A DNA stretch of 64,000 nucleotides from Macrostomum lignano (GCA_002269645.1 NIVC01003379.1:36865-100864); one strand, 5' to 3'. Counted from the stretch's first letter, positions 7,986-64,000 are shown. The notes: generated by a model not told the origin, from the sequence alone. A program made the numbers and translations.

Positions 7986-8662
7986 AGTAAAGTTTTAATA
8001 AGTGTAAGTATATGTCAGTTGTTGTCATTAATTTGAGATTTGAGATATTTGAGATAACAGTGATTAAGATATCGGGAACATTTCTTAGTAGTAATGACTT
8101 AAACGAGTAATTTCTGAATATTTTTGTTTATATTTAATAAACTAAGCAATTGGACGAATCCAATGCATTTTCGTCATGATATGGCATGACGCCATACCAT
8201 CTCTTAACCGTCTCAAAGCTTCAAAGCTCAAAAGCAATTAGTCGAGTTAGTATTATTTTACTTATTAGAATTCGTTTACTTTTTTTGGACAATACCGAAG
8301 ATTCAGTGTATTTAAATGCACAAAGTGTATAGCGGCAGCCCGTACAACAATCCGATGTCGGTCGACGTCTATCTGACCGTCCGATACCGACCAATAATAG
8401 ACGTCGGAGGACGTCCATAGCCAAAGGATACTTTACAGTACACCGACGTCGACTTCGACGTCGGATTGCGACGTTTCTGAACGTCTGAAACGGACGTACT
8501 CAGACGTTTAAATACCAGTAAGATTTGCGGCTTGTGCAAAAAAAGAACAAAAAAACATAGACTATTCACGAAAGTTTCCAAACCTTACTTACGAACGAGC
8601 AAGTGTGAAAAGAAAATGTAGAATAATAGGAGCGCAATTTTATTATAGTGATTGTTTGCAAC

Positions 8663-12090: not shown

Positions 12091-14717
12091 AACTCGATGA
12101 TGAAAACTTCTTCCTGACCACGTTCCACACCCCGTTCGGCCGATATCGCTGGAAACGAGTTCCATACGGTCTCTCATCCATTCCCTAGGTCTTCCAGAAG
12201 AGAATGGAAGAAAACGTCACAAACAACGTGAGAAACTCTAAGAACTTCTTTGACGACATCATCGTGTGGGGAAGAACAGTCGAGGAGCACGACCAAGCTG
12301 TGCGAGAGCTCCTGGAGCAGTGCAAGCGTGCCAAGGTGACACTGAACCCACAGAAGATGCGAGTCGGTGTCCAAGAGCTCAACTACCTAGGCGATGTGCT
12401 CAGCTCGGAAGGGTTGCGAGCAGATCCAATGAAGGTCAAAGCCATCAAAGAAATGATCCGGCCGAATGATGTTGAAGCTCTCACTTCGAAGAAGGAGCAG
12501 CTAAGGCGATTTCTCGGCTGTGTGACGTACCTGGCCAAGTTTGTCCTCATCTTTCCGCTACTGCAGAGCCGCTTAGACACCTGCTCAAGAAAGACGTCAT
12601 TTCGAGCTGGACGCATCAGCACGACGAGGCGTACGACTCGATCATCACGGAGCTGTGTTCTAACAGGGTTTTGGCCACATTTGACGTCAGCAAGCCAGTC
12701 ACCGTGTCTGTGGATGCCAGCAAGAGCGGCATCGGTGCTGTGCTACTCCAAGAGGACCGTCCGGTTGAGTTCGCTTCATCAGCCATGACTAAAGCTCAGC
12801 AGGCATACGCGCAGATTGAGAAGGAGCTCCTGGCTATTGTGTACGGCTGCAAGAAATTTCACCGCTACCTCTGGGGCCGCACTGTTAATGTCCAGAGTGA
12901 CCAAAAGCAACTGGAGTCCATCTTAAAGAAGCAGCTCTGTGACACCACGCCGCGCATCCAGCGCTTGCTGCTGCAGCTGCAGCCCTACGACATTCGTGTG
13001 AAGTACACACCAGGAAAGGAGCTGTACGTCGCAGACACGCTAAGCCGAGCTCACGGAAAGACGGACAGCCTGACGCTTCTGCTGGAGAAAGCTTTGGACG
13101 GACAAGTGCTAGCTGTGGAGCGGTGCTTCAGTGGAGACCGCGAGATTCTGACAATGATCAATAAGGCCACGGCTGCAGACCAGACGAGCCAGCGTCTGCA
13201 GGAGGTCATTCAAGCCGGATGGCCCGAGCATCGAAACCGACTACCTGACGATTTGAAAGTATTTTGGGATCTTCGCTATGATCTGACTTTCGTCTCAGGA
13301 CTCCTGTGCCTGAAGGACCGCATCTACGTGCCAGCCGGCAGCGCCAGAAGCTCGATCCTAAGAATTTTGCACGCTGGACACCCTGGAATCGTCAAGATGG
13401 ACCTGAAAGCCAAAGATTATTTTTACTGGCCAGGAATGCGCACCTGCATCGAGCGAACTGTCAGCCAGTGCGAGGCCTGCCAGCGTAACATGAAGGCCCA
13501 GTCAAAGGAGATATGTGCAGACTGCCAAGAATATGATGAAGAAGTGCCAGGGGACTGGATAGAGCCTGGCACTGGCCCTTTTGCACTATCGCAACACGCC
13601 GGTCGGCAGCGGCTTCCCCAGCCCGGCGGAAATGGCGTTTGGCCGGAAACTGCGGTGCGACCTGCCGACAACGGTGCAAGATCTGCGGCCTCGGGAGACC
13701 TACGTGCATGCCAGCATCGAAGCATTCCAGAAGGAGCGGACCCGGGCAGCTCAGCTCTACAACCGCGGTGCGCACGCACTTCGACGCTTGGAGGTCGGCG
13801 AGCCGGTCTGGCTTCAGTGCGATCGTCGGAACTGGGTGGCTGCCGAGGTCGACAGCGAGGTGGACGGCAGCCCGCGGTCGTACTGGCTTCGCACGGAGTC
13901 GGGCCAGCTGCTCAGGCGCAACCGGCGGTTCATCATGCCACGTGAGATCGGCGTGCCATTCCATGAAAGCTACCCAGTGGCAGTGGCTGATGAGGATGTC
14001 AATCTGTCGGAGGCGGACGACCAGCAGGCACCCGTGCAACCGGCCGTGCAACCCACGACAGAGCAGCCTGCAGAGCCAGTGCAGCCAGCTGAGCAGCCGG
14101 CATCTGTGCAACCGTGCTCAAGCTCGGACGACTCTGGGTTCCGGACCAAGCGAGGTCGGCTTGTCCATCAGCCGCAAAGGTACCAGGCCTCGTGGTAAAC
14201 TTTTGAGTGAAAACTGACTGTTGACTGAATCTAAAGGAACTGAGCTCTTTTTAAATTTCTATAATTTTGGTGAAAGGAGGTATGGCAGAAGTTGATGTGT
14301 TGCCTTTGGTGCTCAAGCGTGCGATTTAAAAAGCGGTCTAAAATGATATTTTTCAACATTATTATTGTATTGTTCCATATGATCGTAAAATATTTCAATG
14401 TTTTTATTTTTCCCCATTCAACTGTTTTCGTGCGACTCTATTCGTGCTACTATATTCGTTCTACTATTTTCGTGCCATTATATTCGTACTTTTCAATGTA
14501 AGGAGGTGTTGTGTAATGATCGATGCTGGCTAGCCGACGTGCAGTCTTTCTCTTTCTCTCTCAGTGCACCTGCCCCCAGTCCCCCATTGACGCGTACAAT
14601 GTAAATTGCTCACTGCACTTGACTAAACAATAATATATATATCGGCTCTCTGCCCATCGCTGGCTTTAAGCGTTTCGTAGCTCGCACACACTCGCCTCAA
14701 CTCGCTCTAACATAACA
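12090..14717 (+). mobile_element. Gypsy/Ty3 LTR retrotransposon, 5'-truncated, defective pol (RT-RNaseH-integrase remnants) with 3' LTR
   Basis: RT: LTTFHTPFGRYRWKRVPYGLSS, FFDDIIVWG, YLGDVLS. RNase H: VSVDASKSGIGAVLLQ, YAQIEKELLAIVYG. Integrase HHCC (HAGHPG...CEACQ) and C-terminal HYRNTP...SPAEMAFGRKLR. Contains stops and frameshifts. Confidence 0.9.
14507..14717 (+). repeat. 3' LTR of the Gypsy element
   Basis: Preceded by the polypurine tract aaggagg. Termini tgttgtg...cataaca form a TG...CA imperfect inverted repeat. Confidence 0.65.
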
Positions 14718-20699: not shown

Positions 20700-22532
20700 C
20701 TAGGTCGCCTTAAGGCGGGCAGGCGCCTGACGGAGCCAGTCGGCAATGGCTGTTTTAACTATATTTGATTCGCACTTGCCCGACTTGCTACCCTGGGCTA
20801 CCAGTCGCCTAACCAAGGAAATTGTGTTAGCAAAATCCTTGAAGACAGCCTTTCCACCTCTTTTGCCTTCGTAATTAAAAGACGCAGCCAATTGCGTAGT
20901 GATAAACTTTGGCATTAACATAAAAACGGCTTTGCGCTGAGAATCAGAAACCATGCAGCCGATATAGGAGGCCAGCATGGTTGATTGTTTAGGAATCCTT
21001 AAGTACTGTTCCAGCTGATCCAATTCGTCCTTTGTGCTTACTGGCAGCACAAAGGGCAAATTTAGCTTTGCAAGCTGGGGCATTTGACGACTAGCCGCCA
21101 GTTGTTTTAGCAGCTGGTTATTTTCCTTCGCTAAAGAAAATGTGGAGCAAACTAAACGCATTAAAGTCGTCTCGTCATCTCCCGTGTAACGAAAGTTTTC
21201 CTCTGCGCAAAATTGCGACAAAAAACTTGTACCCAATGGAGCAGCATTATCCGCCCGTCGCGATGGGCTTGGAGTCAAATGACTGTCCAGTGGGCCTGGT
21301 CCAATGGTGTCGTCATCATCACTGGTGTATTCAAGCGAGCAGCCAGCTGCCGATTGTACCGGTGTAGCAGGACTGAATGGATGAGGTTAAAGAGCATGAC
21401 AATTAAGCTTTCAAAAGCGAATATTTTAGTGGTTTGGATTATACATTGAAATCACCCAGGCCCGCACTTACACCGACCGACCAGAGAAATTCATGCTAGC
21501 GGCTGTTTCTTGTCGTTGAACCGAGCTGCAGGCGCTTGCAGACCGTCCAGCTGCTGAGTGATTTGAGCTAGCGACGCTAGCACTAGCAGCAGATGCTTGC
21601 TTCTGTCGTTGAACAGAGTTGTAGGCGCTTGCAGACCGTCCAGCTGCTGAGTGATTTGAGCTAGCGACGCTAGCACTAGCAGCAGATGCTTGCTTCTGTC
21701 GTTGAACCGAGTTGTAGGCGCTTGCAGACCGTCCAGCTGCTGAGTGATTTGAGCTAGCGACGCTAGCACTAGCAGCAGATGCTTGCTTCTGTCGTTGAAC
21801 CGAGTTGCAGGCGCTTGCAGACTGTCCAACTGCTGAGTGATTTGAGCTAGCGAAGCTAGCAGCAGATGCTTGCTTCTGTCGTTGAACCGAGTTGTAGGCG
21901 CTTGCAGACTGTCCAGCTGTTGATGGATTTGAGCTAGCGACGCTAGCAGCAGACGTCTCGTCATCTTGTCGATGCGAACTGGCACTGGCAGAACAACCAT
22001 GGAGCGAAAATAGCGAGCCAATATCACCAACGTCCTCTTGCTGCAGCATATCAGTTTCGGATTCAGTCTCCGAATCGGATTTAGACTTCGACGACTCGTC
22101 ATCACTTGATACATATTTATTCTTCTTACGCTTTTTCTGTGTTGGTTCCATATCGATAAGTCGATGAACTGGTTTTCTTTGCCTAGGTGCTTCTGAGTCA
22201 GTAGTCTCCAGACCAGGTGTATCCTCGCCCGCAGCAGCAGCAGCTTCTAGCTTCTTTAGCTTTTCGCGTGCTTTTCGTTCAGTTGATGCCATACCTAAGA
22301 CTCTAATAGAGCATGAACGCCATAGTGGCTCAAGTGTAGCTGTAGGCTTTTCCATTTTTGAACGTAAAGAGGCGACTCGACTAGTTGATTGCGAAGTGGG
22401 GTAGGCAACACTGTCCGAAGCTAATAGCCAAATCGATGGTACATAATCAACTGACTTGTCCTCCAGAAACTCGACTATTGTGAAAGCCTGGTTGCTCGAA
22501 TGCATCTGAAAGTGGTGTAATAAGAGTAACAA
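20700..22532 (-). CDS. Two-exon accessory protein with a C-terminal DUF4806-like domain
   Basis: ORF 21468-22532 (FTIVEFLEDKSVDYVPSIWL, NLS-like KKRKK, Ser/Ala repeat) ends at a gtaagt donor. ORF 20700-21278 has LPVSTKDELDQLEQYL...FNYEGKRGGKAVFK...IADWLRQAPARL. Confidence 0.75.
21510..21955 (-). repeat. In-frame 93/87-bp coding minisatellite, ~5 copies
   Basis: 31/29-aa unit QRQKQASAASASVASSNHSAAGRSASAYNSV. Confidence 0.95.
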
Positions 22533-22679: not shown

Positions 22680-24779
22680 CTAAATCATTGGAACAATGAG
22701 CACTGACTCCTCGTCATAATCCTCACCAAGAGGCATAGCAAAAAGCTTTGTAACTGGATCTGTAAGCTCAAACATTACAAAAGTATCTGAGAGCTTTGAG
22801 GCAATGAAAATTCCAAGTGACTTGCTATTGCATGGAAAATTAAAATAGTCTTCTTTTTGTTTGAAGCATATTGCAATGACATAGATGGATGAACAATCAG
22901 CTCGAGTAAAAATCTTTGATAGCTTAGTAGCTACACCATTAAAACTAAAATAGCTGTCTCTCTGATGTTTGACAGATAGTTGCAGTCCTTGAAATTTAGC
23001 TTGGGCAAAAAAAATTGGTTGGAAATCAATTTGCAGTGCAATGTTTCTTGGAAGGCAGTCACTCACTTTTTCAAAAAATTCAATGTTTTTCTGTTGAGAG
23101 CCTTGCAGATTTACAGTTGTAACTTGTGTTACTTCTCTAATTCGGTTTACAAGCTGCATGAATGGCAAGTTACCACTTCTAACACGCCGCCTCAAGAAGC
23201 CAAGAGCATTTTCAAACCGAAAAGCACTAAAAGAGTCAAGACAACCATATAACTCACAATCATCTGGAAGATGCAGCAGTGCATGCAAATTATAAACTAA
23301 GAAGATTCTAGAATAACTTTGCTTGCAACTTCGTAAATAAACTCTAATAAGACGAGCAACCATGTTCTTCCTATGCCCTTCAATACTACTAGAGCACATA
23401 ATTCGAGCAATAATGAAAAGTAGACAGAAGTTCCGAAAAATTTGACGTGGAATCCAGTTATTCTTTAATGCACATATTCCAGTGTACAACAAGAAAGTAC
23501 GAAACTCAGTTGCTTTCCATAATTTATACTGGGCAAGAGGTCTAGTCTTTCTGTTGAACTCAGAAGGCATAAATGTCCGTATTAACTCTAGCCTCTCTGA
23601 GATTGCTACTCGAGCCCTACTAGTCAGTCTAGAAATTCCAAGTGGACCACAATGCCAAAAAGAAATCATGCGCTTAACTACTCCAAGGCAAAGTAAATGC
23701 ATGAAGTCATAGGGAAGCTGAGATATCATGTTGAATGTTGCAAGAGCCAATAGTGGAGATGTTCCTGAATGATGATGATGATCAATCTTTGAACGAAAAG
23801 ACTGGTTACTTCTAAGTGGCACTACAGAAAAGTCATCAAACACAATTCGACCTTCAACTCTTTGTCCACGGATAACGCAACGATCACAGGAATAAAAAGC
23901 AGTATGTCCTTTAATACACTTGATAAGTGCTCGAGCAGGTGTATCAGCCAGAATATACTTCAAATTTAAACGTGTTTGACTTGGGTCTGACATAAGCTCA
24001 TTGATTTCATTAATTAAAGGTGACATCAATTCTGAAGCTGTTGGTTTTACATGTCCTTGATAGATAGCAATGACAAAAGGTGTTTCATTAGATCCTAATA
24101 GTCCTAAGACTGCCCAGCAAGATGAAGTTGAAGACTTAGCAAGTGAGAAACCATCAACAAAAACAACCAAATCAGCCTGATTACAGAAGGAAAAGTCCTT
24201 ATTGTTAAGAAAACACCTCAGACCAAAGTATGCTATTTGGCCAGTTGAAATAGCCTGGATAATTGGCTGAGGAAGATTTGCTTTCAAAAGTGTTTTACCA
24301 CACTTGGGTAAAGTAGGATATTTCTCTTGTAGCCGTGGTAGTAATACATCTAGACTATAGATAGGAATGTTGAATTTGATTACCCATTGTTTAATAAATT
24401 GATTTATGCTATCATCAGGAATACTATTTTCACTAGTAGAGCTTGCTTCTGGCCAAACATCAATAGATGTACTGCTTGCAATTGAACTTTGATCTATCTG
24501 ATCTATAATTTCAGAACTGTTAGATCTAGATTGAAGATTTGGTCCATCAGTTGAACAAGCCTCTAAGAACAAAGATGCCTCTAATTCAGTTGATGCTGAT
24601 TCCAAACAATTAGAATTAGACCTTGCTGTTCTTACTTGATATTTGCTATGAATAATCTTTTTCATAAGTTTTTTAACATTTCGTTCATGTTTTTTTTGGT
24701 TATTAGGAACCATAGATGTGATATTACTGAAAGAAAGAGAAATTGTAAAATAAATTAATAGGGTAAAAGTAAATATCAA
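22680..24779 (-). CDS. EnSpm/CACTA-type DDE transposase, intact ORF (first ATG at 24713)
   Basis: Motifs VFVDGFSLAKSS..CWAVLG, LADTPARALIKCIKGH..FYSCDRC, YDFMHLLCLGVVKR, WKATEFRTFLLY, YNLHALLHL, SAFRFENALG. No stops in 699 codons. Confidence 0.9.
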   Translation of the reverse strand: MIFTFTLLIYFTISLSFSNITSMVPNNQKKHERNVKKLMKKIIHSKYQVRTARSNSNCLESASTELEASLFLEACSTDGPNLQSRSNSSEIIDQIDQSSIASSTSIDVWPEASSTSENSIPDDSINQFIKQWVIKFNIPIYSLDVLLPRLQEKYPTLPKCGKTLLKANLPQPIIQAISTGQIAYFGLRCFLNNKDFSFCNQADLVVFVDGFSLAKSSTSSCWAVLGLLGSNETPFVIAIYQGHVKPTASELMSPLINEINELMSDPSQTRLNLKYILADTPARALIKCIKGHTAFYSCDRCVIRGQRVEGRIVFDDFSVVPLRSNQSFRSKIDHHHHSGTSPLLALATFNMISQLPYDFMHLLCLGVVKRMISFWHCGPLGISRLTSRARVAISERLELIRTFMPSEFNRKTRPLAQYKLWKATEFRTFLLYTGICALKNNWIPRQIFRNFCLLFIIARIMCSSSIEGHRKNMVARLIRVYLRSCKQSYSRIFLVYNLHALLHLPDDCELYGCLDSFSAFRFENALGFLRRRVRSGNLPFMQLVNRIREVTQVTTVNLQGSQQKNIEFFEKVSDCLPRNIALQIDFQPIFFAQAKFQGLQLSVKHQRDSYFSFNGVATKLSKIFTRADCSSIYVIAICFKQKEDYFNFPCNSKSLGIFIASKLSDTFVMFELTDPVTKLFAMPLGEDYDEESVLIVPMI

Positions 24780-37751: not shown

Positions 37752-39061
37752 ATACTCTAGACTACCAACTTTAATTGCAAACAACTTAGTCCTTAATTTT
37801 ATAATTCCTATTTATTTCTATTTTTTTTCCTTTTATATATGCATCACAATACCCATATTCAAGATTTCATCCAACATTCAAAATCATAATCCTACATCAA
37901 AGCAACCATTCAGTATTTGGATTATCAGCTTTTTAGTTCAAGTTTTAACCAAATTTTTGGTTGATTAAATTTAATTTTGAATATTCTTGATATCTATCCT
38001 ATCTTTGCATACATATAGGTACATTTTGGACAACCCATTTGTAAGCTAAACTTTTCTAATTAGTTTTTGCTAGATACCACTGTGCATTGAAATTTTTTCT
38101 AAGCTTTTGCTATATGCCATAGGTACCAATTTATATACAATTTTTTTATATATTAAAATTTTTTTTGCCATAATATACACATTCCTGAATATAGTCACCA
38201 AGTAAATCTAGTCTATTTGTATTTTTCATACTTTCTTTATAAGTACATCTTGCTATACAACCTTTACTAAGCAAAAGCTTATTGCTATCAAAGCCACTGT
38301 TTAAGTGTTACTATGAAAAAGTAACTTCTAGTTAAATAACTTTTGGTTCCAAGGAAAATAATTTCTAGTACTTTCATTATTAGTCCTTTTAGTCCTTTTA
38401 AATTTTAAAGAACTATCTATTAAAAAGTGCTTTAACATTTCTTAGTAGAAAACAAAAAATATATTGACTAAGAGTTAAACATATAGACTTATTAATTTTT
38501 TCTAAAATAAAAATGTTATATAATATTTTTCATAATTATTGCATTTAAAATTTAAGTTAATTAGCAAAATATTATAAACAAGAAGTAGCAGCATGCTATA
38601 ATAAAGGTTTTAACATTGTAAAATAAAGTGCTTTAATTGATATATAAATGTAGTTTTTTAGTTAATATTCTTGAAAAAATATTTTTATATATAACATTGT
38701 CAAGTCTCATTTAATAAATGTGATTTCTGATAATATTAGCAAAGCAAAATAATGTAATTTAGGAAAGTAACTGTCCTTACCTTTTAAGTAAATATTAATT
38801 GAATTGGCTATTACTATTAATTAGCTAAGAGCTACAACTTGAAAGATCAAGTTTAGAAGAGATTTAGTATATTGGATTTGTCTCAATATAGCCAATAGCC
38901 ATTAATAAATTGCTAAATTCCAGTTCTGAAGCAAGGATTCAAATTTTATTAGCTGGTGTAAAATATGGCTGCAAATTGTACACATACACTGCAAAAATGT
39001 TGGGTATCTGCAGAATTTAATAAATAACTGCATAAGTTACAAAAATGTTGCTGGTCAACTA

Positions 39062-39432
39062 GCCTCTCAGATCCTCAGTTGCTAGGCCAGCTTCTCAGAT
39101 CCCCAGTTGCTAGGCCAGCCTCTCAGATCCTCAGTTGCTGGGCCAGTCTCTCAGATCCTCAGTTGTTGGGCTACCAGCCTGCCAGATCCTCAGTTGCTGG
39201 GCCACCAGCCTCCCAGATCCTCAGTTGCTGGGCCAGCCTCGCAGATCCTCAGTTGCTGGGCCAGCCTCTCAGATCCTCAGTTGCTGGGCCAGCCTCCCAG
39301 ATCCCCAGTTGCTGTGCCAGCCTCCCAGATCCTCAGTTTCTGAGCCAGCCTCCCAGATCCTCAGTTGCTGTGCCAGCCTCCCAGATCCCCAGTTCCTGGG
39401 CCAGCCTCCCAGATCCTCAGCTACTGGGCCAG
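39062..39432 (+). repeat. 28/31-bp minisatellite (family also at 40183-40715 and 49500-49945)
   Basis: Unit cct(c)ccagatcc(t/c)cagttgctgggcca(cca)g. Confidence 0.95.
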
Positions 39433-39551
39433 CCATCAGAGATAACTGGAATACCTAAATTACACATCTACTTACCAAACACTTGCAGAAGGCATTCCCG
39501 ATGGTAAAACGAGTTTCCAAGCTGTAAAGTGGGGCTCAGCCCAGCCTCGTT

Positions 39552-40944
39552 ATGGCTGCTCCAGCTGCCCCTCAGCTGACAGTGGAGCATCGGCAAACGC
39601 TAGTAAAAGCTTCCACTGCCATTTCAAACAAACTTGGCGCCAGAATTAATCGATTAGCCAATAGTAATACGGTGCCAGATTTCTACGAAGCATTAAACGC
39701 AGTTGTCTACTTGACCTCGAGCGCCTGCTCTTTAAGTTATGTCTCTAGGGAAGCTCGGATGGCTTCATTTGTTCGCGTAGGCTGGGACAATCGTAGCGGT
39801 GTTAGTGGCGGAGGTCAAACAGCCGAGGACATGGCAGAGTGCGGTTTTTATAGCCTAGGCGACGCTGATCACGTCAAGTGCTTCTTCTGCGACTTGGGAC
39901 TGCGGGACTGGATCAGGGGGGACAGTCCCGAGCGGGAGCACGCCAAGTTCAGCCCGCTGTGCTTCTATTTGAAGAGCTGCCTGGGTCTTGACGGTCTGCA
40001 GGCGGTCACTCCGCAAACTACTAATTATCCGGCATCGTACACCAGGCAGGATCACAATCAGCTGATGCGCACCATTGGCGAAGACTTTTGTGGCCCTGTA
40101 GGCCGAGTCGCCTGCGGCGTTGGACTGGACGATACTAAAGTTCTGCTGGCTTTAGCTAGGAACTTCATCCGGTTTAGGTGACTGTCCTCAGTTGCTGGGA
40201 CACCAGCCTCCCAGATCCCCAGTTGCTGGGCCACCAGCCTCCCAGATCCCCAGTTGCTGGGCCACCAGCCTCCCAGATCCCCAGTTGCTGGGCCACCAGC
40301 CTCCCAGATCCCCAGTTGCTGGGCCACCAGCCTCCCAGATCCCCAGTTGCTGGGCCAGCCTCCCAGATCCCCAGTTGCTGGGCCAGCCTCCCAGATCCCC
40401 AGTTGCTGGGCCAGCCTCCCAGATCCCCAGTTGCTGGGCCACCAGCCTCCCAGATCCCCAGTTGCTGGGCCACCAGCCTCCCAGATCCCCAGTTGCTGGG
40501 CCACCAGCCTCCCAGATCCCCAGTTGCTGGGCCACCAGCCTCCCAGATCCCCAGTTGCTGGGCCACCAGCCTCCCAGATCCCCAGTTGCTGGGCCACCAG
40601 CCTCCCAGATCCCCAGTTGCTGGGCCACCAGCCTCCCAGATCCCCAGTTGCTGGGCCACCAGCCTCCCAGATCCCCAGTTGCTGGGCCAGCCTCCCAGAT
40701 CCCCAGTTGCTAGAGCAGTGTCAGTTGCTGGGCCACTCCCTCTGCAGTCCAGCCGAGTATCACAAGGCTCAGCCCCCTTCCCCGCATTGCCAGGAAGCGC
40801 TACTCAGCCAAGGAGCTCATCCTGAGTGCCCAGTCAGAGTGGCAGCGAGAGCTACTCAACAACCCTTCAGATCCGCCGCAGTTTTTGAGCGGCTTCAACC
40901 TGGCTGCCGTGTTTCGCGAGTTCTACAGAATAATAGCATCGTGA
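39552..40944 (+). CDS. Single-BIR IAP-family protein, 258 aa, exons 39552-40177 and 40794-40944, UBA-like segment, no RING
   Basis: BIR: EARMASF...MAECGFY..G..DHVKCFFC(x16)H(x6)C. The GT donor at 40178 and polypyrimidine AG at 40793 join in phase 2 to give LARNFIRFRKRYSAKELILSA...FYRIIAS*. Confidence 0.85.
40183..40715 (+). repeat. 31/28-bp minisatellite filling the IAP intron
   Basis: ~17 near-perfect units cctcccagatccccagttgctgggccaccag starting just after the donor. Confidence 0.97.
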
Positions 40945-47008: not shown

Positions 47009-50000
47009 CTAGTTGCCAGCGCTGGGACTCCTGGCCGCCAGCGACCTTCGCTTGGTCTTCACCAGATCAGCGATGGACACGTCTAGCGACGCTTGCGAAT
47101 CCCCGGCGCCCGCCGCCGCCGCCGCAGACGACCCGTCGAATCCGCCGTCGCCATCGGCGCCGACAATCGAATCTTGACTCCGACGCTTTCTCGAATTACC
47201 CACGCCGCTACAGCTACTACTGATGCTACTGTTAGTAGCAACCAGCGCTGCGTGCTCTTTATTGTCGCTAGACGAAGGAGTCGGCTGCTGCTGTTTCTTG
47301 AAGCCGATCGACCGACGCAAGCCCGGCTGTCGGACGCCGCTGCCGCCGGCAATCTGACGCGTCAATGTCGGACTATCGACAAATCTGTGCCGCTGCAGCA
47401 GGGATTGGTTTCTATTAGAAGAGGCTGGCGTGGTTGGCATGGCAACGGGCTCCAGGTCGGGCAGGCCGAGGCCCAGCTGGCCAGACAGAAACTCCCGAGC
47501 CCTGCTTATCAGAGTCGATGACGAGTTCAAAGCGGAGCGGAACGAGCTGGGCAGGTCGGCCGGGTTCAAGGCTGACAGGTCGCTCAGATCGGTGAAGTGC
47601 AGCAGCGGCAGGCCGGGCAGCACCTCGGTGCCTGTTGAGCGGCGCTGGAGGAGAAACATTGAGTTGCTGAGCTGACAGGGCATGGGAATGGCAGGCAGAG
47701 GGGAACAGAGGGAGAGACACCCAGTGCCCAGGAAATATTTGGGTAGATTGCCGATTTTCCATAGTCTATCGGTATACTTATTCATCAGGCCTGACAACAG
47801 GGAGAGGGGGAGAGGAAAGATGAGGAGAGGGGGAGAGGGGATAGGGCACAGAGACTAGAATAACTAGATTGGCCACTCAGGCATTTATACTTAGCAAAAC
47901 AGCTGTTTTTCTAAGAGTACTTCAGTCCTGTAGCAATGGAGAATACATAAGCTAGTCATATTTTATAAGAATAAAGGCAGCTGAAATGACTTTGATAAGC
48001 TTAGAAGCCCAAGCTTGCAGGCGCGTAAACAGCTTGCCAATTGGTTCAGTCATAATGTACATTGGCCACAGAAATGTACATGGCAGATTTAGGCTGGAAC
48101 AACCAAGGAAGGTAATAAAAAATTGGGTGGCGGGGCGGGGGTAGAGTTTATGTGTGGAGTTTGAGGGTTTTAAGCTTAGGGAAGGGGGTAAGAGCAAATG
48201 GGGAGAGGAGGGTGAGAGGGGGAGAGGAGCTGAGAGGGTTAGAGGAGGGTGAGAGGAGGAGAGGAGCTGAGAGGGTAAGAGGAGGGTGAGAGGAGGGTGA
48301 GGGGGTGAGGGGAGAGGGGAGAGAGGCAGTAGGAACCGCAGGCCCATCAGCAGCCCCACCTGCAGGTTGAAGGCGGCAAGCGGTCTGCCCGTGAGCGCCA
48401 GTCCCGCCAGCCCCAGACTGGCCAGGCCAGCCCAGACCCGGACACAGACGAGGCCGGCGCTGCCGCAGTCGCCGTCGCCGTCGCAACGCTCCGGATCGGC
48501 CAGCACCGCCATCATTCGGCCGTCGTCCCACACGGCGACAAGCAGGCCGCGGAGGTCTAATTCGTTGTCGATGATTGCGCCGGCGTGTTGTGCTGGCGGC
48601 AAGGGCAGGCGGAGGAAACTGCGAGGTCGGTGCCGCGTCAGGATGAGGTCGGCGCGCTGCCCGAGCTCCAGGGGTCGGATAAGGCCGCCGCGGCTGAGGT
48701 TCAGAGACATCTGCGTGTCCGGGTGATGGCAACGAATAAGAGATTTCCTGTTGGAGACTTAGCTGGGATCTGTGAGAGATAAACGACTCCCTATAACATC
48801 ATGGCCCTATGAGCGATTCTCTTATAACACCATGGCCCTATGAGCGATTCTCTTATAACACCATGGCCCTATGAGCGATTCTCTTATAACACCATGGCCC
48901 TATGAGCGATTCTCTTATAACACCATGACCCTATGAGCGATTCCTTTATAACATCATGACCCTATGAGGGATTTCATTATAAAACCATGACACTATGAGC
49001 GATTTCCTAAAAACACGATGACCCTATGAGCGATTTCCTAAAAACACGATGACCCTATGAGCGATTTCCTAGCAACCAACCCCCCCCCCCACCCGACAAA
49101 ATCGCACCCGATGCCCGCCGGAAGCAGCGGATCCCACATTCGCCCCGAGCACCAGCAGGCCGCAGCCCTCGCGCAGCCAGGACTCGGCGCCCTCCTCCGG
49201 GTTCCACACAGTCAGGGTGGCCACGGCGCCTTCGTCCAAGTCGGCGTCCTCGGTGCCGATGACCAGCAGGCGAACCAGCGGCGTCACCTGACGCTGCTGG
49301 ACGAGCGGCGGCAGCAGCTGCTCCCGGAGCCGAGTCAGAACGTCTCGCTGACGCTCCGTCAGCCAGGCCTGCAGTTCGTCCGCGTTCAGGGCGGAGCGCA
49401 GGGCGGCCTGAAGCTCCTCGCCGGTGCTCAGCTGGGACACTTCATCAGGCTGGTAGAGACGGCCGCGCTGCTGCGGGGGCTTGGAGCCCAGCTGAAATTG
49501 GGATGCGGTGTTGGGATCTGGGAGGCTGGCGGCCCAGCAACTGAGGATCTGGGAGTCTGGCCCAGCAACTGGGGATCTGGGAGTCTGGCCAAGCAACTGG
49601 GGATCTGGGAGGCTGGCGGCCCAGCAACTGGGGATCTGTGAGTCTGGCCCAGCAACTGGGGATCTGGGAGTCTGGCCCAGCAACTGGGGATCTGGGAGTC
49701 TGGCCCAGCAACTGGGGATCTGGGAGTCTGGTCCAGCAAATGAGGATCTGGGAGGCTGGCGGCCCAGCAACTGAGGATCTGGGAGGCTGGTCCAGCAACT
49801 GGGGATCTGGGAGGCTGGCGGCCCAGCAACTGGGGATCTGGGAGTCTGGCCCAGCAACTGGGGATCTGGGAGTCTGGCCCAGCAACTGGGGATCTGGGAG
49901 TCTGGTCCAGCAACTGGGGATCTGGGAGGCTAGCGGCCCAGCAACTGGAAGCAGCCACCAACCTGGTCCTCCACAGCTTCCTCCATTCGCCGGCGGGCCT

Positions 50001-52514: not shown

Positions 52515-55500
52515 ATGCCAGAAGTTCGTCGAATGACCTTGGCCGCTCGGCCGAAAAATCAAGTGGTTGTGAGTTACTAACTGTCTAACTGTTGGATACT
52601 TTACTAAAATGTTGCATTTTAACATTGGTTAATGACACCCAAAATATTTCAGTTCGGCGTGGTAGACAACACGCCCAAGCTGCAGTTGGACATGACCGAC
52701 GAGAGGAGCGTAGAGAACCTATCCAGGGTGTGCCACTTTCTCATGCGAGAGGGCAAGGCGTGCTTGAGAAGCCTATTCGATTCCAAGCATCCAACGGACG
52801 AGCTAACGGAACACTTGGCCTCGCCGGACATTCACCGGACGCTGAGGCGACTTAAGATCAAAGACATGCTAACCGAAGACGACTGGCAGACGCTCTACCC
52901 GAAGGAGAAATCTTCCGTGTCCGCTGACAACTACGACCTGCGTCTGCTGCTCCTGTTAGTAAAATACACCTGCGATGTGACGAAGCCGCAGCCAAACGGC
53001 TGGATGGGAGATCCGGAACCTCGCGATGACAGCCAGGGCGCAGCGCTGCAACGCCTACTGGGCATTCAACGCGAGCTCGCCTCGCTGCAGACCTTAAAGG
53101 CGAGCGCAGCTAACAGACTGTTTAGCCGCATTGCCGAGCAGCTCCAGCGACTGGGACACTCGGGTGCAGCAGACTGTATGAACGCATACAAGCAGGACAC
53201 TAGCATGGACGAGACTGAATCGCGCTTCATTCTGGGCGAATTCCTCGTCTGGTACCGCCAAGAGGTCAGCCAGTTGAAGAGAGAAATCGAAAACCAAGAA
53301 CGAAAGAAGAAGCGCGAAGAGATTCCTATTCTGCAGAAACGGCTCAAGACGCGCGATTTGGACACGTCGGAAACGAAAAAACGCCAGTCGGTTGTTGGAA
53401 AGGCGACGATGGACATGAGCGACAAGTCGCGCTGTCAGAGATGGGCTCATATCAAAACTGGCATGGTATTAGCGGAGCGCCTCATTCTCGACAAGTACTA
53501 CGAACAGTTGCTCAACGATGTAAAAGCGGACACAGTGGTTGAGCATCTGATGAACAAGGAGATTATTACCCAAGACGAGAGCACGGAAATATTTTCTACT
53601 CTGCGCAACAACGAGCAGATGTCGACGTTGATCGACTTTCTAGTGCCAAAATCTGGCAATGTGTTGGATGAGTTCGTTGAATCGCTGAAACCCAAGAACG
53701 AACAGGTGTACCAGCAGATGCACCAGGACTACCAGGCCGCTAAGGCCGACATCCTTGCTAATAAACCACGTAAGTATTTATAGTAATTAATAAATCCTCT
53801 TTAAGAGTTGATCATAGGATTTTTCTGTTTCTTCTGTTTCTTCAGAGGGTCTGCCTTACTGTAACAACATTCTTCGAGAGCGGTACTCCACCGCGTACGC
53901 CAAATGGAATCCGATTCCATGGTACACTAAAGTTGAAACAGACATTGCCGAATTCTACTGTCAACAGCAGCTGCTCAATTTGAATGGGTAAGTAGCAGGA
54001 AAACAGATCAGATCATTAAGCCAGACATAATTTTCAACTTTGATTTCTCAATTTAAAATTGCAGAAAGTCAGTCAACGCCTTCCAAGTTTTTGATTATAA
54101 GGAAGGCGAAAAAGACCCGCATACAGTAGTCATTGAGGGTGACCCCGGAACAGGGAAGAGTACGCTGGCTAAGTATATGGCCTACAAATGGTCTTTGGAC
54201 GAAAACGTATTCGGACGGCCTTTCCAACTGCTAATCTTGCTTGATCTCAAAGTGACAGCGCCCACAGTGAAAGTGATGATGATGGAACAGCTTTTCGGAG
54301 GCGACTGCAAGCTGGCCGAACGCGAAATTTGGGAGGTGATGAACATGCACCAGGCGAGCACACTGCTCATCATAGATGGCTACGAAGACAATCTAAATGA
54401 TGAGATGAAGAGTTTGCTATTTGAGAACATCATGCCGGAACTGCACATTCTGGTATTTAGTCAGACTAACTTTACAGTCAGACTGATGCACCGCTACCAG
54501 CGAAAGGTAATTCTGACCGGATTCGCCAAATCCCAGGCAGAGGAGTACGTTCAGAAGTACGTCAAACTAGCTAAGAAGCCGTGGGAACACTTTTCCTCGT
54601 TTCTAAACAAGCTAGTAGTGGCAAAAAAATCAACTGAGCTTCAAAAGCTGCTGGATGCAGCGAAAAAGTCGCAGGAGCCGCAGAGGCGACGCGGGTCGTC
54701 AGAATCGGCGACATCTGTGACCTCGGCAAAGCCCAGAGACGAGCGACCTTTGGAGAGGGAAAACACGGACAAAGTCAGCACAAAACTAAGCCGCAGCTCT
54801 AGCAAGGGTCAAGGAAACGATCAGCAGCAACAACAGGATTCAAACGGTGAAAATTCAAATCAAAGCAAAATAGCGTCCCTGCGACATTACTCACAGGTGC
54901 CTTTGTACTGTTCGTTCTTCTGCCTGCTGACCGACATGCGCATGAGTATCGATCTGAACTCTCCGACAACAATTGTGGAACAGTTTGTCTCCTGCATCAA
55001 GTTGAAGCTGATCGAACGCGAAAAGGAGAGTCGCTTCGAAGCGAATCGCGCCTACGCAATGCTGTCCGAACGCGCTATGGACACCATAAAGAAAGGCAGC
55101 GCAACTTTCATTTTGGCCAAGGAGGACCACATGATGACTAAGTTCGGCCTGATTCAACTGGCTACAAACCTCACCGCAGAGGATAACCAGCGCTACATGT
55201 TTGGCAATCGTCTTATTCAAGAGTATCTCGCCGCGAAAAATCTAGACACTAGTGGAACAGATGAAGCTAGCCGCTTCTTCCAGAACATGAGTATGACTCC
55301 GATCTCCTACAATGTTGTTGTGTTCTACTGCAGCATCCGCAAGTCGGACAACGACACGCCGGCCACCCGGGAACTGTTTGCAAAGATACTGCAGTATAAC
55401 AAACGGCGAGGCAAAGCGAGTCGCATGAAAATGCCAGCGGCTACGTCGCCAGAAGACAGTCAACTGGTCGAGGGCAAGATCATGGACTACCAGCTCAGTC

Positions 55501-56603
55501 TGGAATGCGTGGCGGTCATGGACATGGCCCGCAGAGATCTTGGCAAGAAAATTGTTGAATCGCTGCCAGAGCGATTCACCGTGAAGCACGAGGGCATCAT
55601 TCCGAGATTGTCGCTTACAGGCCTGTCCAAGATGATCAAGTTTAACCACACGACCATCCAAGAGGTGGACTTGCGCCTAGATCTGCTAGCCAAAGAGACG
55701 CTTGAGGCATACAAAAGTCTGGCTACCGCAATGAAAACGAACGTTCACATCAAGACGCTCCGCATCTACTGGACAGAGAAGGATCTAATGGCAGACTTCC
55801 TTCAAACCGTGTGCTGTCCGGAGCCAGAGGACCCCGCCAATTCTACAGGCCAGATGGAAATCAGGCGTAAGAAGCCCGATCAGACCGGCTTTCATCTGAA
55901 GAATCTTGAGTGCATCGACGAGTCAGGAAAGAAGCTGGACCAGTTGTCGCCAAAAATGCTAAACAACATGCGCGAAGCCTGCTCGAACATGACTAAACTA
56001 GAAACGTTCGCATTTCAAAATTGTCACCACATGTCGCTGGTTGGAAGCATAATAAAAAATTTGCCAACTAAATTTGCGGACAACCTGCGCATTCTAGACT
56101 TTTCTGGCTGCCAGATGAGCATAGTGGCATCGCAGGATCTCAACGGAAAGCTGATGGAGAGCAAGAGTCTAGAAGGCCTGATCTTGGCTAACCTCAAGAT
56201 TGATGCGATGGCCTTTAACACTTTCATCGCCGCATTCTCTAGCAATCGGACCATTGTCCTGCTGGATTTGAGCGGAATCCGCCTGGACAATGTCTGCTTC
56301 TTCTCTCTATCCGAAGCGCTGAAAATTAATAACAAGCTTGAGAAGCTATTCTTACGCCAGGTGCCAATGGACACGAGAGCTTGCAAAGAGGTGGCTAGAA
56401 TTCTAAAGATTAATAAGATGCTGAAACTTCTCACGGTCACGCAGGAGATCGTCAGCGAGGAGGGTCGCCGGGTTCTGGGCGAGGAGAGCCAGACGGAGAC
56501 GCGCAAGAATCGGGCGGTCGTGGACGGCATCGGGGTGGAGTATCGGCAGAGACCGACGAACGAGAGGGCCAATACTAAGAGAAACCCGCTGTCAGTCAAG
56601 TGA
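52515..56603 (+). CDS. NLR protein, 1283 aa: DZIP3-type HEPN, coiled coil, CARD, NACHT, LRR; exons 52515-52568, 52653-53769, 53846-53987, 54065-56603
   Basis: Exon phases 0/1/2 are consistent (3852 nt). HEPN_DZIP3-like: LRSLFDSKHP..L...L...W..LYP...YDLRLLLLL..C....P.NGW...P...D.S. CARD-like: YYEQLLNDVKADTVVEHLMNKEIIT...LIDFL....LDEFVESL. Pre-NACHT PIPW, Walker A GDPGTGKS, Walker B LLIIDGYED, and 28-aa ribonuclease-inhibitor-type LRRs. Confidence 0.9.
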
Positions 56604-58355: not shown

Positions 58356-58675
58356 ACAGCCGTAGTACAGTCAAGTCAGTATTGCTAATCTCTTCAGGAA
58401 AATGATGTTTAAAGGAAAGCAGCATCAGTCTTGAGAAACAGCTATCTAGCTGAAGATATGAGATTCCCTATGAGTTTTTTTGGCTCAAAACATCTGAGTA
58501 ACCACCAAGAGCCACAGAATTTCAGCAATTCCCCCCAATGAGCCTTGACATCTCAGCATTTCCCACACGAACCTTGGCATGTCCCAATTACCACACTGTC
58601 ATTTTAAAATGTTTTCTCTGTGTTTTTGGCATGATTTTCTACACACTTTAGTTCCTTATCTGAACCTTTCTGAAT

Positions 58676-58915
58676 TTAGGGCAATGGGAATCACACTTTA
58701 GGGCAATGAGAATCACACTTTAGGGCAATGGGAATCACACTTTAGGGCAATGAGAATCACACTTTAGGGCAATTAGAATCACACTTTAGGGCAATGAGAA
58801 TCACACTTTAGGGCAATGGGAATCACACTTTAGGGCAATGAGAATCACACTTTAGGGCAATGAGAATCACACTTTAGGGCAATGAGAATCATACTTTAGG
58901 GCAATGAGAATTACT
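58676..58915 (+). repeat. 22-bp satellite, ~10 copies
   Basis: Unit tagggcaatgagaatcacactt, the reverse complement of the array at 63345-64000. Confidence 0.97.
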
Positions 58916-63344: not shown

Positions 63345-64000
63345 TAGGGCAGCGATTCTCATTGCCCTAAAGTGTGATTCTCATTGCCCTAAAGTGTGAT
63401 TCTCATTGCCCTAAAGTGTGATTCTCATTGCCCTAAAGTGTGATTCTCATTGCCCTAAAGTGTGATTCTCATTGCCCTAAAGTGTGATTCTCATTGCTAA
63501 AGTGTGATTCTCATTGTCCTAAAGTGTGATTCTCATTGCCCTAAAGTGTGATTCTCATTGCCCTAAAGTGTCATTCTCATTGCCCTAAAGTGTGATTCTC
63601 ATTGCCCTAAAGTGTCATTCTCATTGCCCTAAAGTGTCATTCTCATTGCCCTAAAGTGTGATTCTCATTGCCCTAAAGTGTGATTCTCATTGCCCTAAAG
63701 TGTGATTCTCATTGCCCTAAAGTGTGATTCTCATTGCCCTAAAGTGTGATTCTCATTGCCCTAAAGTGTGATTCTCATTGTCCTAAAGTGTGATTCTCAT
63801 TGCCCTAAAGTGTGATTCTCATTGCCCTAAAGTGTCATTCTCATTGCCCTAAAGTGTGATTCTCATTGCCCTAAAGTGTGATTCTCATTGCCCTAAAGTG
63901 TGATTCTCATTGCCCCTAAAGTGTGATTCTCATTGCCATAAAGTGTGATTCTCATTGCCCTAAAGTGTGATTTCTCATTGCCCTAAAGTGTGATTCTCAT
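63345..64000 (-). repeat. 22-bp satellite, ~30 copies, running off the window end
   Basis: Unit attctcattgccctaaagtgtg. Confidence 0.97.

What the first reader, a model, noticed from the sequence alone, without database searches (positions are those of the whole stretch)
52515..56603. Intact NLR with tandem effector modules: degenerate DZIP3-type HEPN plus CARD ahead of NACHT-LRR
Seen: a 4-exon, 1283-aa uninterrupted gene with the order HEPN-like (~52680-53110), coiled coil, CARD-like (~53480-53740), NACHT and LRR. Known: HEPN RNases use an R-x4-6-H motif, typically R..RN...H in DZIP3-type domains; HEPN-STAND fusions act in prokaryotic antiviral defence, and CARD-NLRs nucleate caspase platforms. 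Here the motif position reads QRLLGIQRELASL, lacking Asn and His. Inference: an invertebrate immune receptor joining a probably nuclease-dead HEPN (RNA-sensing or dimerising module) to a caspase-recruiting CARD. This is the best candidate for an undescribed system in this window.
Basis: partly seen in the sequence, partly recalled or inferred. Interest (0 to 1): 0.75.

Follow-up and report, generated by a model that had tools for sequence, protein, structure and literature searches.

The report
Flatworm NLR with dead HEPN and CARD
This is an intact flatworm (Macrostomum lignano) gene for an intracellular NLR-type sensor protein, the local copy of a receptor kept in many worms, snails, clams and lampshells; its architecture is already listed in published surveys, so it is a new member of a known, functionally untested kind and not a new system.

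Summary
Four GT-AG exons (52515-56603, +) give a 1283-aa protein. It is 100% identical to the deposited Macrostomum lignano hypothetical protein BOX15_Mlig026612g2.

- **Domains.** Pfam finds HEPN_DZIP3 (E 2.5e-17), CARD (6e-9) and NACHT (5e-15). The C-terminus matches ribonuclease-inhibitor-type LRRs of solved NLRs.
- **Motif.** At the family's R-N-x3-4-H position the protein reads Q157-R158...S162.
- **CARD.** A confident AlphaFold model superposes on Apaf-1/caspase-9 CARDs (TM 0.81-0.87).
- **HEPN fold.** The HEPN model (pLDDT 94) matched no solved structure, so the HEPN fold rests on sequence only.

The "undescribed system" reading is not supported.

- **Orthologues.** One protein each from Lingula, Tubulanus, Owenia, Capitella, Lottia, Haliotis and Mizuhopecten has the same HEPN-CARD-NACHT(-LRR) order and aligns end to end.
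- **Literature.** Published surveys already list HEPN-NLRs. One table records one HEPN_DZIP3 protein and one each of NACHT+HEPN, NACHT+LRR and NACHT+CARD in several spiralians, including the planarian Schmidtea.

Two points may be new. The catalytic Asn/His loss is shared by the whole clade (26 of 28 sequences). The "dead" HEPN is also the most conserved domain.

I rate it a new member of a known kind, of modest interest.

The parts
52515..52568 (+). Exon 1 (aa 1-18), start codon at 52515; unconserved N-terminal tail
   Evidence: GT donor at 52569; the joined CDS is identical to the deposited protein. An in-frame ATG at 52632 inside intron 1 would give an alternative unspliced start.
52653..53769 (+). 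Exon 2 (aa 19-390): HEPN_DZIP3 domain, long helix, linker, CARD
52701..53201 (+). HEPN_DZIP3-family domain (aa 35-201), all-alpha, eight helices
   Evidence: Pfam PF18738 E 2.5e-17, profile positions 3-140 of 144. AF2 pLDDT 94.3, pTM 0.88. Coordinates checked by translation.
53052..53084 (+). Degenerate catalytic-motif segment R152-LLGI-Q157-R158-ELA-S162. The family has R157-N158-x3-4-H here.
53211..53378 (+). Long E/R/K-rich helix (aa 205-260) between HEPN and CARD, followed by a disordered linker (aa ~262-276)
   Evidence: AF2 model helix 187-242 in model numbering; weak heptads.
53469..53759 (+). CARD (aa 291-387), six-helix death fold
   Evidence: Pfam PF00619 E 6.3e-9. Foldseek: the top 50 PDB hits are nearly all CARDs, the few others being designed proteins. 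Apaf-1/caspase-9 CARD TM 0.81-0.87, rmsd 1.4-1.8 A.
53846..53987 (+). Exon 3 (aa 391-438), pre-NACHT segment with invariant P413 and W416
54065..56603 (+). Exon 4 (aa 438-1283 plus stop): NACHT, helical/winged-helix region, LRR
54120..54566 (+). NACHT NTPase domain (aa 457-605). Walker A GDPGTGKS at 54138-54161; Walker B LLIIDGYED at 54363-54389.
   Evidence: Pfam PF05729 E 4.7e-15; motifs; coordinates.
54660..54902 (+). Low-complexity Ser/Gln/Lys-rich insert (aa 637-717), absent from all seven orthologues
   Evidence: Alignment A1. Its composition is coding-like: AT 0.48 against 0.69-0.74 in the three introns, with no strong in-frame donor.
55890..56501 (+). Ribonuclease-inhibitor-type LRR region (aa ~1047-1250)
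   Evidence: phmmer against PDB: NLRP14, NLRP5 and RNase inhibitor LRRs, E 1.7e-7 to 1e-5. Collinear with orthologues that hit Pfam LRR_6. Pfam itself gives no LRR hit here.

Best explanation
The gene encodes the Macrostomum lignano orthologue of an old spiralian NLR that appears to be single-copy in most spiralian genomes. Its domain order is HEPN_DZIP3, CARD, NACHT, LRR.

Shown here:
- The gene is intact.
- The four domains are present in that order.
- The whole protein is collinear with one protein each from a brachiopod, a nemertean, two annelids and three molluscs.
- The NTP-binding motifs are intact.
- The HEPN Arg-Asn...His triad is lost across the whole clade, yet the HEPN domain is the best conserved part of the protein.

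Inferred mechanism, by analogy with solved NLRs and apoptosomes:
1. The LRR holds the NACHT module closed.
2. A cytosolic ligand or danger signal releases it.
3. Nucleotide-dependent NACHT oligomerisation clusters the CARDs.
4. The clustered CARDs nucleate a CARD-bearing partner, either an initiator caspase or a CARD adaptor.

The HEPN domain is most likely a pseudo-RNase kept for a non-catalytic job. That job could be self-association or regulation of the N-terminal platform, or binding of an RNA. The CARD would then carry the output that an active HEPN RNase is presumed to carry in the CARD-less HEPN-NACHT-LRR relatives.
For: Identity and intactness:
- (100% match to BOX15_Mlig026612g2).
- the window is identical to NIVC01003379.1, and a second copy on NIVC01004146.1 is 99.85% identical.

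Domains.

Orthology:
- The best full-length hits of an exhaustive HMMER search with aa 19-390 are single proteins from Lingula, Tubulanus, Owenia, Lottia, Mizuhopecten, Capitella and Haliotis.
- All seven have HEPN_DZIP3 + CARD + NACHT in the same order and align end to end.
- The NACHT-LRR half alone ranks the same seven first, at 126-224 bits against 121 or less for other HEPN-NLRs.
- Their HEPN domains form one neighbour-joining clade.
- This CARD type occurs only in that group among the 150 best hits.

Single-copy status: PMC9646362 Table S18 lists exactly 1 HEPN_DZIP3 protein, 1 NACHT+HEPN, 1 NACHT+LRR and 1 NACHT+CARD in Lottia, Haliotis, Gigantopelta, Pomacea and Schmidtea mediterranea. 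[quoted passage not shown]

Motif loss:
- Clade: 26 of 28 sequences lack an anchored R-x4-6-H, and Asn158 is present in 2 of 28.
- Other relatives: 54 of 81 keep the motif, and Asn158 is present in 59 of 81.

Constraint: mean pairwise identity is HEPN 0.39, CARD 0.31, LRR 0.28 and NACHT 0.26.

Precedent: HEPN domains without the motif are predicted non-catalytic RNA binders (PMC3710099).
Against: - No experiment or expression datum was available for this gene; the literature search for the gene id found nothing.
- No CARD partner could be sought in the M. lignano proteome with these tools.
- The HEPN model matched no solved HEPN structure. Its HEPN fold, and hence the phrase 'dead nuclease', rests on Pfam and published sequence-profile classification.
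- Conservation without lineage-specific expansion is unusual for pathogen receptors, so it may point to an endogenous ligand.
- By eye, this clade lacks the Arg usually found at the NACHT sensor-1 position. NTP hydrolysis may therefore be atypical.
- The neighbour-joining tree has no support values.
Confidence: 0.6

Rival explanations
1. The protein is not a pathogen receptor. It is a conserved regulator of programmed cell death or stress (Apaf-1-like in logic) that senses an endogenous signal, with the conserved HEPN-like domain as the sensing or regulatory module.
For: - It is single-copy, or the only HEPN_DZIP3 gene, in many spiralian genomes. It shows none of the lineage-specific expansions seen for HEPN-NACHT genes in oysters and corals.
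- The HEPN domain is the most conserved part.
- The CARD is structurally closest to Apaf-1/caspase-9 CARDs.
Against: - The C-terminus is an RI-type LRR as in NLRs, not WD40 as in Apaf-1.
- The NACHT is closest to NLRP1 and NLRP14.
- Conserved single-copy NLRs that detect microbial ligands also exist (established knowledge: NOD1).
- The gene is absent from Schistosoma, so it is dispensable in at least one flatworm lineage.
Confidence: 0.25
2. The HEPN domain is still an RNase that uses alternative residues, so the protein has two active effector modules (RNase plus CARD).
For: - Arg152 just upstream is kept in 27 of 28 clade members.
- The clade has its own conserved polar signature: H126, Y131, N133 and R84.
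- PMC3710099 notes that some HEPN families use alternative active-site residues.
Against: - The window protein lacks even the clade signature (D126, Q131) as well as R157, N158 and H162.
- No His lies within reach of the motif helix.
- Arg152 is equally conserved in motif-bearing relatives (77 of 81), so it looks structural and not compensatory.
Confidence: 0.08
3. The CARD does not recruit a caspase. It recruits a CARD adaptor or kinase leading to NF-kB/MAPK-type transcriptional signalling, as in NOD1/NOD2-RIPK2 or CARD-CC/BCL10.
For: - Orthologues are auto-named NLRC3/NLRC4/NOD2-like.
- A BCL10/paracaspase module is reported in annelids and molluscs (abstract of bioRxiv 10.1101/046789, listed).
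- NOD1, RIP2 and CARD9 CARDs are also among the structural hits.
Against: - The best structural matches are Apaf-1, caspase-9 and NLRC4 CARDs, although CARD subtypes cannot be told apart at TM ~0.8.
- The presence of such adaptors in M. lignano was not tested.
Confidence: 0.25
4. The gene model is an annotation artefact or a decaying pseudogene.
For: - Two private inserts are absent from all orthologues (aa 637-717 and ~1019-1043).
- The HEPN deviates more from the clade consensus than any orthologue.
- The gene sits in a very repeat-rich region.
Against: - 1283 codons are open across four exons with canonical splice sites.
- Walker A and Walker B are intact.
- 49 alignment columns are invariant across the eight orthologues.
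- The insert has coding composition and no intron-like signals.
- Both assembly copies encode the identical protein.
- A related partial gene in another sample (L003) is 37-47% identical and open.
Confidence: 0.03

Closest known systems
Spiralian HEPN_DZIP3-CARD-NACHT-LRR proteins: Lingula XP_013410021 'NLRC3-like', Mizuhopecten XP_021374729 'NLRC4-like', Lottia XP_009051454, Capitella ELT89336, Owenia CAH1778043, Tubulanus XP_074650995, Haliotis XP_071116058. The single such protein tabulated for Schmidtea and the NLR described for Aplysia probably belong here too.
   Same: - Same four domains in the same order, collinear over the full length.
- Same loss of the HEPN Asn/His: Ser at the His position in 6 of the 7 orthologues, and in the query.
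- Same top ranking with either half of the protein as query.
   Different: - Only 21-26% identical.
- M. lignano has also lost Arg157 and the clade-specific H126/Y131.
- It carries two private inserts and no Pfam-detectable LRR_6 repeat.
- None of these proteins has been studied functionally in the literature I could search.
Expanded HEPN_DZIP3-NACHT(-LRR) 'HEPN-NLRs' of cnidarians and bivalves (PMC8260672, PMC9646362, PMC8662601)
   Same: An N-terminal HEPN_DZIP3 domain ahead of a NACHT STAND NTPase, often with RI-type LRRs.
   Different: - They lack the CARD between HEPN and NACHT.
- They mostly keep R-N-x3-4-H: 194 of 202 in pearl oyster, and 54 of 81 in my set.
- They occur in large, variable gene families and not as a single conserved gene.
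Vertebrate CARD-NLRs (NOD1/NOD2, NLRC4) and the Apaf-1 apoptosome
   Same: CARD + STAND NTPase + C-terminal repeat sensor. The CARD superposes on Apaf-1, caspase-9 and NLRC4 CARDs. The NACHT and LRR match NLRP1, NLRP14 and NLRC4 at the sequence level.
   Different: - They have no HEPN-family domain in front of the CARD.
- No orthology is shown.
- Apaf-1 uses NB-ARC and WD40, not NACHT and LRR.
Human DZIP3/hRUL138 (the founding member of Pfam PF18738)
   Same: Shares the HEPN_DZIP3 domain family.
   Different: DZIP3 is an RNA-binding RING ubiquitin ligase without CARD, NACHT or LRR (PMC3710099 table). Human has 1 HEPN_DZIP3 protein and 0 NACHT+HEPN.
Prokaryotic HEPN-STAND defence proteins
   Same: The general logic of a HEPN domain N-terminal to a STAND NTPase (PMC3710099).
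   Different: There is no specific similarity. PADLOC gives only a weak P-loop hit (mad8, E 1.4e-5) and nothing for the HEPN part. The HEPN_DZIP3 family is essentially restricted to animals.

Membership tests
Pfam PF18738 HEPN_DZIP3 (DZIP3/hRUL138-like HEPN) | Sequence match to the family profile above the curated threshold, over most of the profile | tested here: met
   63.4 bits against a cut-off of 27, E 2.5e-17, profile positions 3-140 of 144. 388 relatives at E<=1e-3 in an exhaustive search.
Pfam PF18738 HEPN_DZIP3 (DZIP3/hRUL138-like HEPN) | Conserved R-x4-6-H endoRNase motif, usually R-N-x3-4-H ('mostly conserved' in this family, PMC3710099) | tested here: not met
   Q157, R158 and S162 at the aligned positions. 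No His-containing match at the motif site.
HEPN superfamily (fold level) | Four-helix up-down HEPN core superposable on solved HEPN domains | tested here: inconclusive
   The model is confident (pLDDT 94.3, pTM 0.88) and all-alpha with eight helices. Foldseek found no PDB match (best E 3.1, TM <=0.27) and no BFVD match. Sequence and profile searches of the PDB found nothing. Foldseek is weak on helical bundles, and no HEPN_DZIP3 structure is solved.
CARD (Pfam PF00619; death-fold superfamily) | Profile match above threshold and a six-helix death fold superposable on solved CARDs | tested here: met
   36.2 bits against 23.9. Six helices at aa 291-387. The top 50 Foldseek PDB hits are nearly all CARDs, with TM 0.81-0.87 and rmsd 1.4-1.8 A to Apaf-1/caspase-9 CARD.
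CARD (functional) | Homotypic binding of a CARD-bearing caspase or adaptor | not testable with these tools
   The M. lignano proteome could not be searched, and there is no interaction assay.
NACHT STAND NTPase (Pfam PF05729) | Profile match above threshold; Walker A GxxxxGK[ST]; Walker B hhhhD[GAS]x[DE][DE] | tested here: met
   56.3 bits against 26.7. GDPGTGKS at aa 463-470 and LLIIDGYED at aa 538-546. The sensor-1 Arg appears absent in the whole clade, judged by eye only.
NLR (NACHT plus LRR) | C-terminal leucine-rich repeats of the ribonuclease-inhibitor type | tested here: met
   phmmer hits to the LRRs of NLRP14, NLRP5, NLRP1 and RNase inhibitor over aa 1107-1250, E 1.7e-7 to 1e-5. Collinear with orthologues that hit LRR_6. 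Caveat: no Pfam LRR hit on this protein.
Spiralian HEPN-CARD-NACHT-LRR orthologue group | Same domain order, full-length collinearity, mutual top ranking with either half of the protein, shared derived loss of Asn158/His162 | tested here: met
   The tree is neighbour-joining without support values. No reciprocal search from the orthologues' side was possible.
Prokaryotic HEPN-STAND anti-phage systems | Match to a defence-system protein model | tested here: not met
   PADLOC gives only mad8 at E 1.4e-5 over the P-loop region, and nothing for the HEPN part.

The most novel reading that the evidence does not exclude
In an NLR retained across much of Spiralia, and the only bona fide NLR in several of those genomes, a HEPN-family domain lost its RNase residues before flatworms, molluscs, annelids, brachiopods and nemerteans diverged. 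It has nevertheless been kept as the most constrained part of the protein, next to an inserted CARD. This would be a case of effector succession, in which the CARD takes over output. The pseudo-RNase would persist as an obligatory RNA-sensing or self-association module, giving a conserved RNA- or danger-sensing CARD platform in protostomes that lack vertebrate-type inflammasome NLRs.
Probability: 0.3. Interest if true: 0.55.

Novelty: new member of a known kind. Interest (0 to 1): 0.3.

Why it matters
NLRs are missing from the classical protostome models (fly, nematode), and flatworm innate immunity is poorly mapped. This gene shows that a free-living flatworm with good genetic tools (RNAi, transgenesis) keeps the single HEPN-CARD-NLR also tabulated for the planarian Schmidtea. 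The parasite Schistosoma has none.

No animal HEPN-NLR has been tested functionally in the literature I could search. M. lignano would therefore be a practical place to ask two questions: what this conserved receptor senses, and what a HEPN domain without catalytic residues is for.

The clade-wide loss of the catalytic residues, together with the top conservation of the domain, is a small and concrete comparative result. I did not find it stated in the papers I could read.

Tried and rejected
Searches that led nowhere:
1. Word-indexed protein searches with the N-terminal half and with an alignment of eight N-terminal halves returned nothing. The full-length search returned only the protein itself and two distant NLRs. 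The exhaustive representative search was needed instead.
2. Cluster look-up of ten short His-less HEPN fragments gave no names or taxa.
3. Fold comparison of the HEPN model gave no match in the PDB or BFVD, after two refusals of the tool. Sequence and profile searches of the PDB with the HEPN domain also found nothing.
4. The most relevant survey, Zhu et al. 2022, Gene 843:146807 (NLRs across lophotrochozoans), is not held. I cannot say whether it already notes the motif loss.
5. The gene id Mlig026612 is not mentioned in any searchable paper.
6. A Pfam scan of the C-terminal 343 aa gave no LRR family even at E<=10.

Ideas considered and rejected:
1. A paralogue cluster in the window: there is none.
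2. The aa 637-717 insert as a retained intron: rejected on composition and the lack of splice-like signals.
3. A two-stranded coiled coil between HEPN and CARD: the heptad signal is weak and the segment is ER/K-like.
4. A link to prokaryotic defence STANDs: not supported.
5. The R-x6-H match at aa 57-64 as a substitute active site: it is the family-wide LRxxFDxxHPP structural motif, present in active relatives too.
Full report
**1. What is in the sequence**

The region 52515-56603 (+) contains four open segments joined by three short AT-rich introns (84, 76 and 77 nt) with GT..AG ends. Splicing 52515-52568, 52653-53769, 53846-53987 and 54065-56603 gives a 3852-nt CDS encoding 1283 aa plus a stop.

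The product is 100% identical over its full length to a deposited protein: Macrostomum lignano hypothetical protein BOX15_Mlig026612g2, listed in UniRef as 'CARD domain-containing protein'. The window is therefore flatworm DNA (Platyhelminthes, Macrostomorpha).

The window is identical to contig NIVC01003379.1 of assembly GCA_002269645.1. A second contig carries a 99.85% identical copy that encodes the same protein. There is no paralogue elsewhere in the window.

**2. Domains**

| Domain | Residues | Evidence |
|---|---|---|
| HEPN_DZIP3 | 68-206 | Pfam 63 bits, cut-off 27 |
| CARD | 297-376 | Pfam 36 bits, cut-off 23.9 |
| NACHT | 457-605 | Pfam 56 bits, cut-off 26.7 |
| LRR | 1107-1250 | phmmer to LRRs of NLRP14, NLRP5, NLRP1 and ribonuclease inhibitor, E 1.7e-7 to 1e-5 |

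- Walker A (GDPGTGKS) and Walker B (LLIIDGYED) are intact.
- No Pfam LRR model hits the C-terminus.
- An AlphaFold2 model of aa 19-390, built on 127 aligned sequences, is confident (mean pLDDT 88). It shows an all-helical N-terminal domain (aa 35-199), one long helix (aa 205-260), a disordered linker and a six-helix bundle (aa 291-387).
- Foldseek against the PDB returned almost only CARDs in the top 50. Apaf-1 and caspase-9 CARDs score TM 0.81-0.87 at rmsd 1.4-1.8 A. The death fold is confirmed.
- The long helix is E/R/K-rich with weak heptad periodicity, so 'coiled coil' is not demonstrated.

**3. The HEPN motif**

I aligned 158 HEPN stretches from the 150 best relatives. The family consensus around the site is A-D-[IL]-x-R152-[LIV]-K-x-[YF]-R157-N158-x-[LV]-x(1-2)-H. 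This agrees with the published R-x4-6-H logo, in which Asn follows the Arg (PMC9646362).

The window protein reads R152-L-L-G-I-Q157-R158-E-L-A-S162, so Arg, Asn and His are all replaced. The only R-x4-6-H string in the N-terminal 260 aa (aa 57-64) is the family-wide LRxxFDxxHPP motif, which is not the catalytic site.

**4. A caveat on 'HEPN'**

A second model of the HEPN domain alone is very confident (pLDDT 94.3, pTM 0.88). Foldseek nevertheless found nothing similar in the PDB (best E 3.1, TM <=0.27) or in BFVD. Sequence and profile searches of the PDB also found nothing.

Membership of Pfam PF18738 is solid. That this family has the HEPN fold and an RNase site is a published sequence-profile prediction (PMC3710099). 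I could not verify it structurally.

**5. Relatives**

An exhaustive HMMER search with aa 19-390 found 388 relatives at E<=1e-3. The best full-length hits are one protein each from:

- Lingula anatina
- Tubulanus polymorphus
- Owenia fusiformis
- Lottia gigantea
- Mizuhopecten yessoensis
- Capitella teleta
- Haliotis species

Their automatic names include 'NLRC3-like', 'NLRC4-like' and 'CARD domain-containing protein'.

Evidence that this is a whole-gene orthologue group and not a chance domain shuffle:

- All seven have HEPN_DZIP3, CARD and NACHT in the same order, and two also hit LRR_6.
- They align with the window protein from HEPN to the C-terminus at 21-26% identity, with 49 invariant columns.
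- The NACHT-LRR half alone ranks the same seven first.
- Their HEPN domains form one neighbour-joining clade.
- This CARD type occurs only in this group among the 150 best hits.

More distant HEPN_DZIP3 proteins have other architectures: HEPN-NACHT-LRR without CARD, HEPN-NB-ARC-TPR, HEPN-NPHP3_N-WD40, HEPN-nSTAND3-ankyrin and HEPN-B-box-filamin-NHL.

A partial gene in a Logan assembly (ERR14224704, organism unknown to me) is much closer. It is 37% identical over HEPN-CARD and 47% over NACHT, and it also lacks the motif (LRRHLASL).

**6. The literature already has this kind**

- Anantharaman et al. 2013 list DZIP3/hRUL138 HEPN fusions to CARD, NACHT, DEATH and LRR in animals.
- Tassia et al. 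2021 describe HEPN-NLRs in nine invertebrate taxa and suggest RNA sensing.
- Emery et al. 2021 find HEPN_DZIP3 to be the commonest NACHT partner in many cnidarians.
- Takeuchi et al. 2022, Table S18, lists exactly one HEPN_DZIP3 protein, one NACHT+HEPN, one NACHT+LRR and one NACHT+CARD protein in Lottia, Haliotis, Gigantopelta, Pomacea and the planarian Schmidtea mediterranea. It lists none in Schistosoma.

I found no functional study of any animal HEPN-NLR. The architecture is therefore widespread and annotated, but uncharacterised.

**7. What may be new**

Within the clade that holds all the HEPN-CARD-NLRs, compared with the other relatives:

| Feature | Clade | Other relatives |
|---|---|---|
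| Lack an anchored R-x4-6-H | 26 of 28 | 27 of 81 |
| Asn158 present | 2 of 28 | 59 of 81 |
| Ser at the His position (162) | 16 of 28 | 19 of 81 |
| Arg152 kept | 27 of 28 | 77 of 81 |

- The upstream LLRN Arg122 is also largely lost in the clade. Meanwhile the clade gained its own signature, C-H-L-x-P-P-Y-P-N-G-W plus R84.
- Despite the loss, the HEPN domain is the most conserved part of the eight orthologues: mean pairwise identity 0.39, against CARD 0.31, LRR 0.28 and NACHT 0.26.
- The catalytic loss is therefore old and shared, and the domain remains under constraint.
- M. lignano is the most derived member. It has also lost R157, H126 and Y131, and it has two private inserts. The larger one (aa 637-717) looks coding and not intronic.

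**8. Mechanism**

Shown: an intact STAND NTPase with a CARD and an LRR; a motif-less but constrained HEPN-family domain; conservation across much of Spiralia.

Inferred by analogy with solved NLRs and apoptosomes: LRR-mediated autoinhibition, ligand-triggered and nucleotide-dependent oligomerisation, and CARD clustering that nucleates a CARD-bearing caspase or adaptor.

The HEPN domain most likely acts non-catalytically, in self-association or regulation, or in RNA binding as proposed for other motif-less HEPN domains. In several species this protein is the only HEPN_DZIP3 protein in the genome. Recruitment of other HEPN proteins is therefore unlikely there.

The rivals are an endogenous-signal or cell-death regulator instead of a pathogen receptor, CARD signalling to an NF-kB-type adaptor, residual RNase activity through other residues, and a pseudogene or annotation artefact. 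Each is weighed in its own section.

**9. Verdict**

The gene is a new (flatworm) member of a known, functionally untested kind of NLR, not an undescribed system. It merits modest interest, mainly as a tractable entry point in M. lignano and for the clade-wide pseudo-HEPN observation.

Noticed in passing
window 39552-40181 (+): A 209-aa ORF encodes a single BIR (inhibitor-of-apoptosis) domain with the Cx2C...H...C zinc site (Pfam E 4.5e-16). Its best PDB matches are NAIP5 and cIAP BIR domains (E 5e-21). It lies ~12 kb upstream of the NLR on the same strand and is bracketed by the same 28/31-bp minisatellite. No gene with exactly this product is on record.
   Followed up: partly
window 39061-40711 and 49513-49948; 58675-58914 and 63354-64000: Two pairs of minisatellite arrays in inverted orientation (28/31-bp unit; 22-bp unit, 96-97% complementary over 240 nt). 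The NLR gene sits between the two pairs. The 39-51 kb stretch is a patchwork of arrays (27 bp x45, 21 bp x30, 23 bp x21, 45 bp x10), which explains its GC and skew anomalies.
   Followed up: partly
window 12671-13945 (+): An ORF with RT_RNaseH, RT_RNaseH_2 and Integrase_H2C2 domains: a fragment of an LTR-retrotransposon pol gene.
   Followed up: no
window 22680-24779 (-) and 11276-12181 (-): Two ORFs (699 and 301 aa) share a C-terminal 'F-x-F-E-N...LP..QL.NR' motif. The shorter one has a weak DUF4218 hit, so they are probably two copies or fragments of one DNA-transposon transposase family. The long one has no Pfam hit.
   Followed up: partly
window 9812-10473 (-) and 21511-21948 (-): Long ORFs made largely of tandem repeats (66 bp x10 at 95% identity; 93 bp x4.8), giving repetitive Ser/Ala-rich peptides. 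There are no Pfam hits, and it is unclear whether they are genes.
   Followed up: no
window 54660-54902 (aa 637-717) and aa ~1019-1043: Two inserts are private to M. lignano relative to seven orthologues. The larger is a Ser/Gln/Lys-rich low-complexity stretch between the NACHT and the helical domains, with coding-like composition.
   Followed up: yes
window ~54450-54480 (aa ~567-577) and alignment A1: By eye, the whole HEPN-CARD-NLR clade lacks the Arg usually found at the NACHT sensor-1 position (FSQ, TTE, TTK and so on, instead of T-[ST]-R). The Haliotis orthologue also has Gln in place of the Walker A Lys (GAPGIGQT).
   Followed up: no
L003 (Logan ERR14224704, 2598 nt) 475-2594: A partial homologue much closer than any named orthologue (37% identity over HEPN-CARD, 47% over NACHT), also motif-less. 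It lacks the intron that M. lignano has after aa 390 but has a gap at the position of intron 3. It is probably from another flatworm, but the organism was not identified.
   Followed up: partly
L002 (NIVC01004146.1) 571-8654: A second copy of the whole gene region is 99.85% identical (1 mismatch, 11 gap openings over 8.1 kb) and encodes the identical protein. It is either a haplotype or a recent duplicate.
   Followed up: partly
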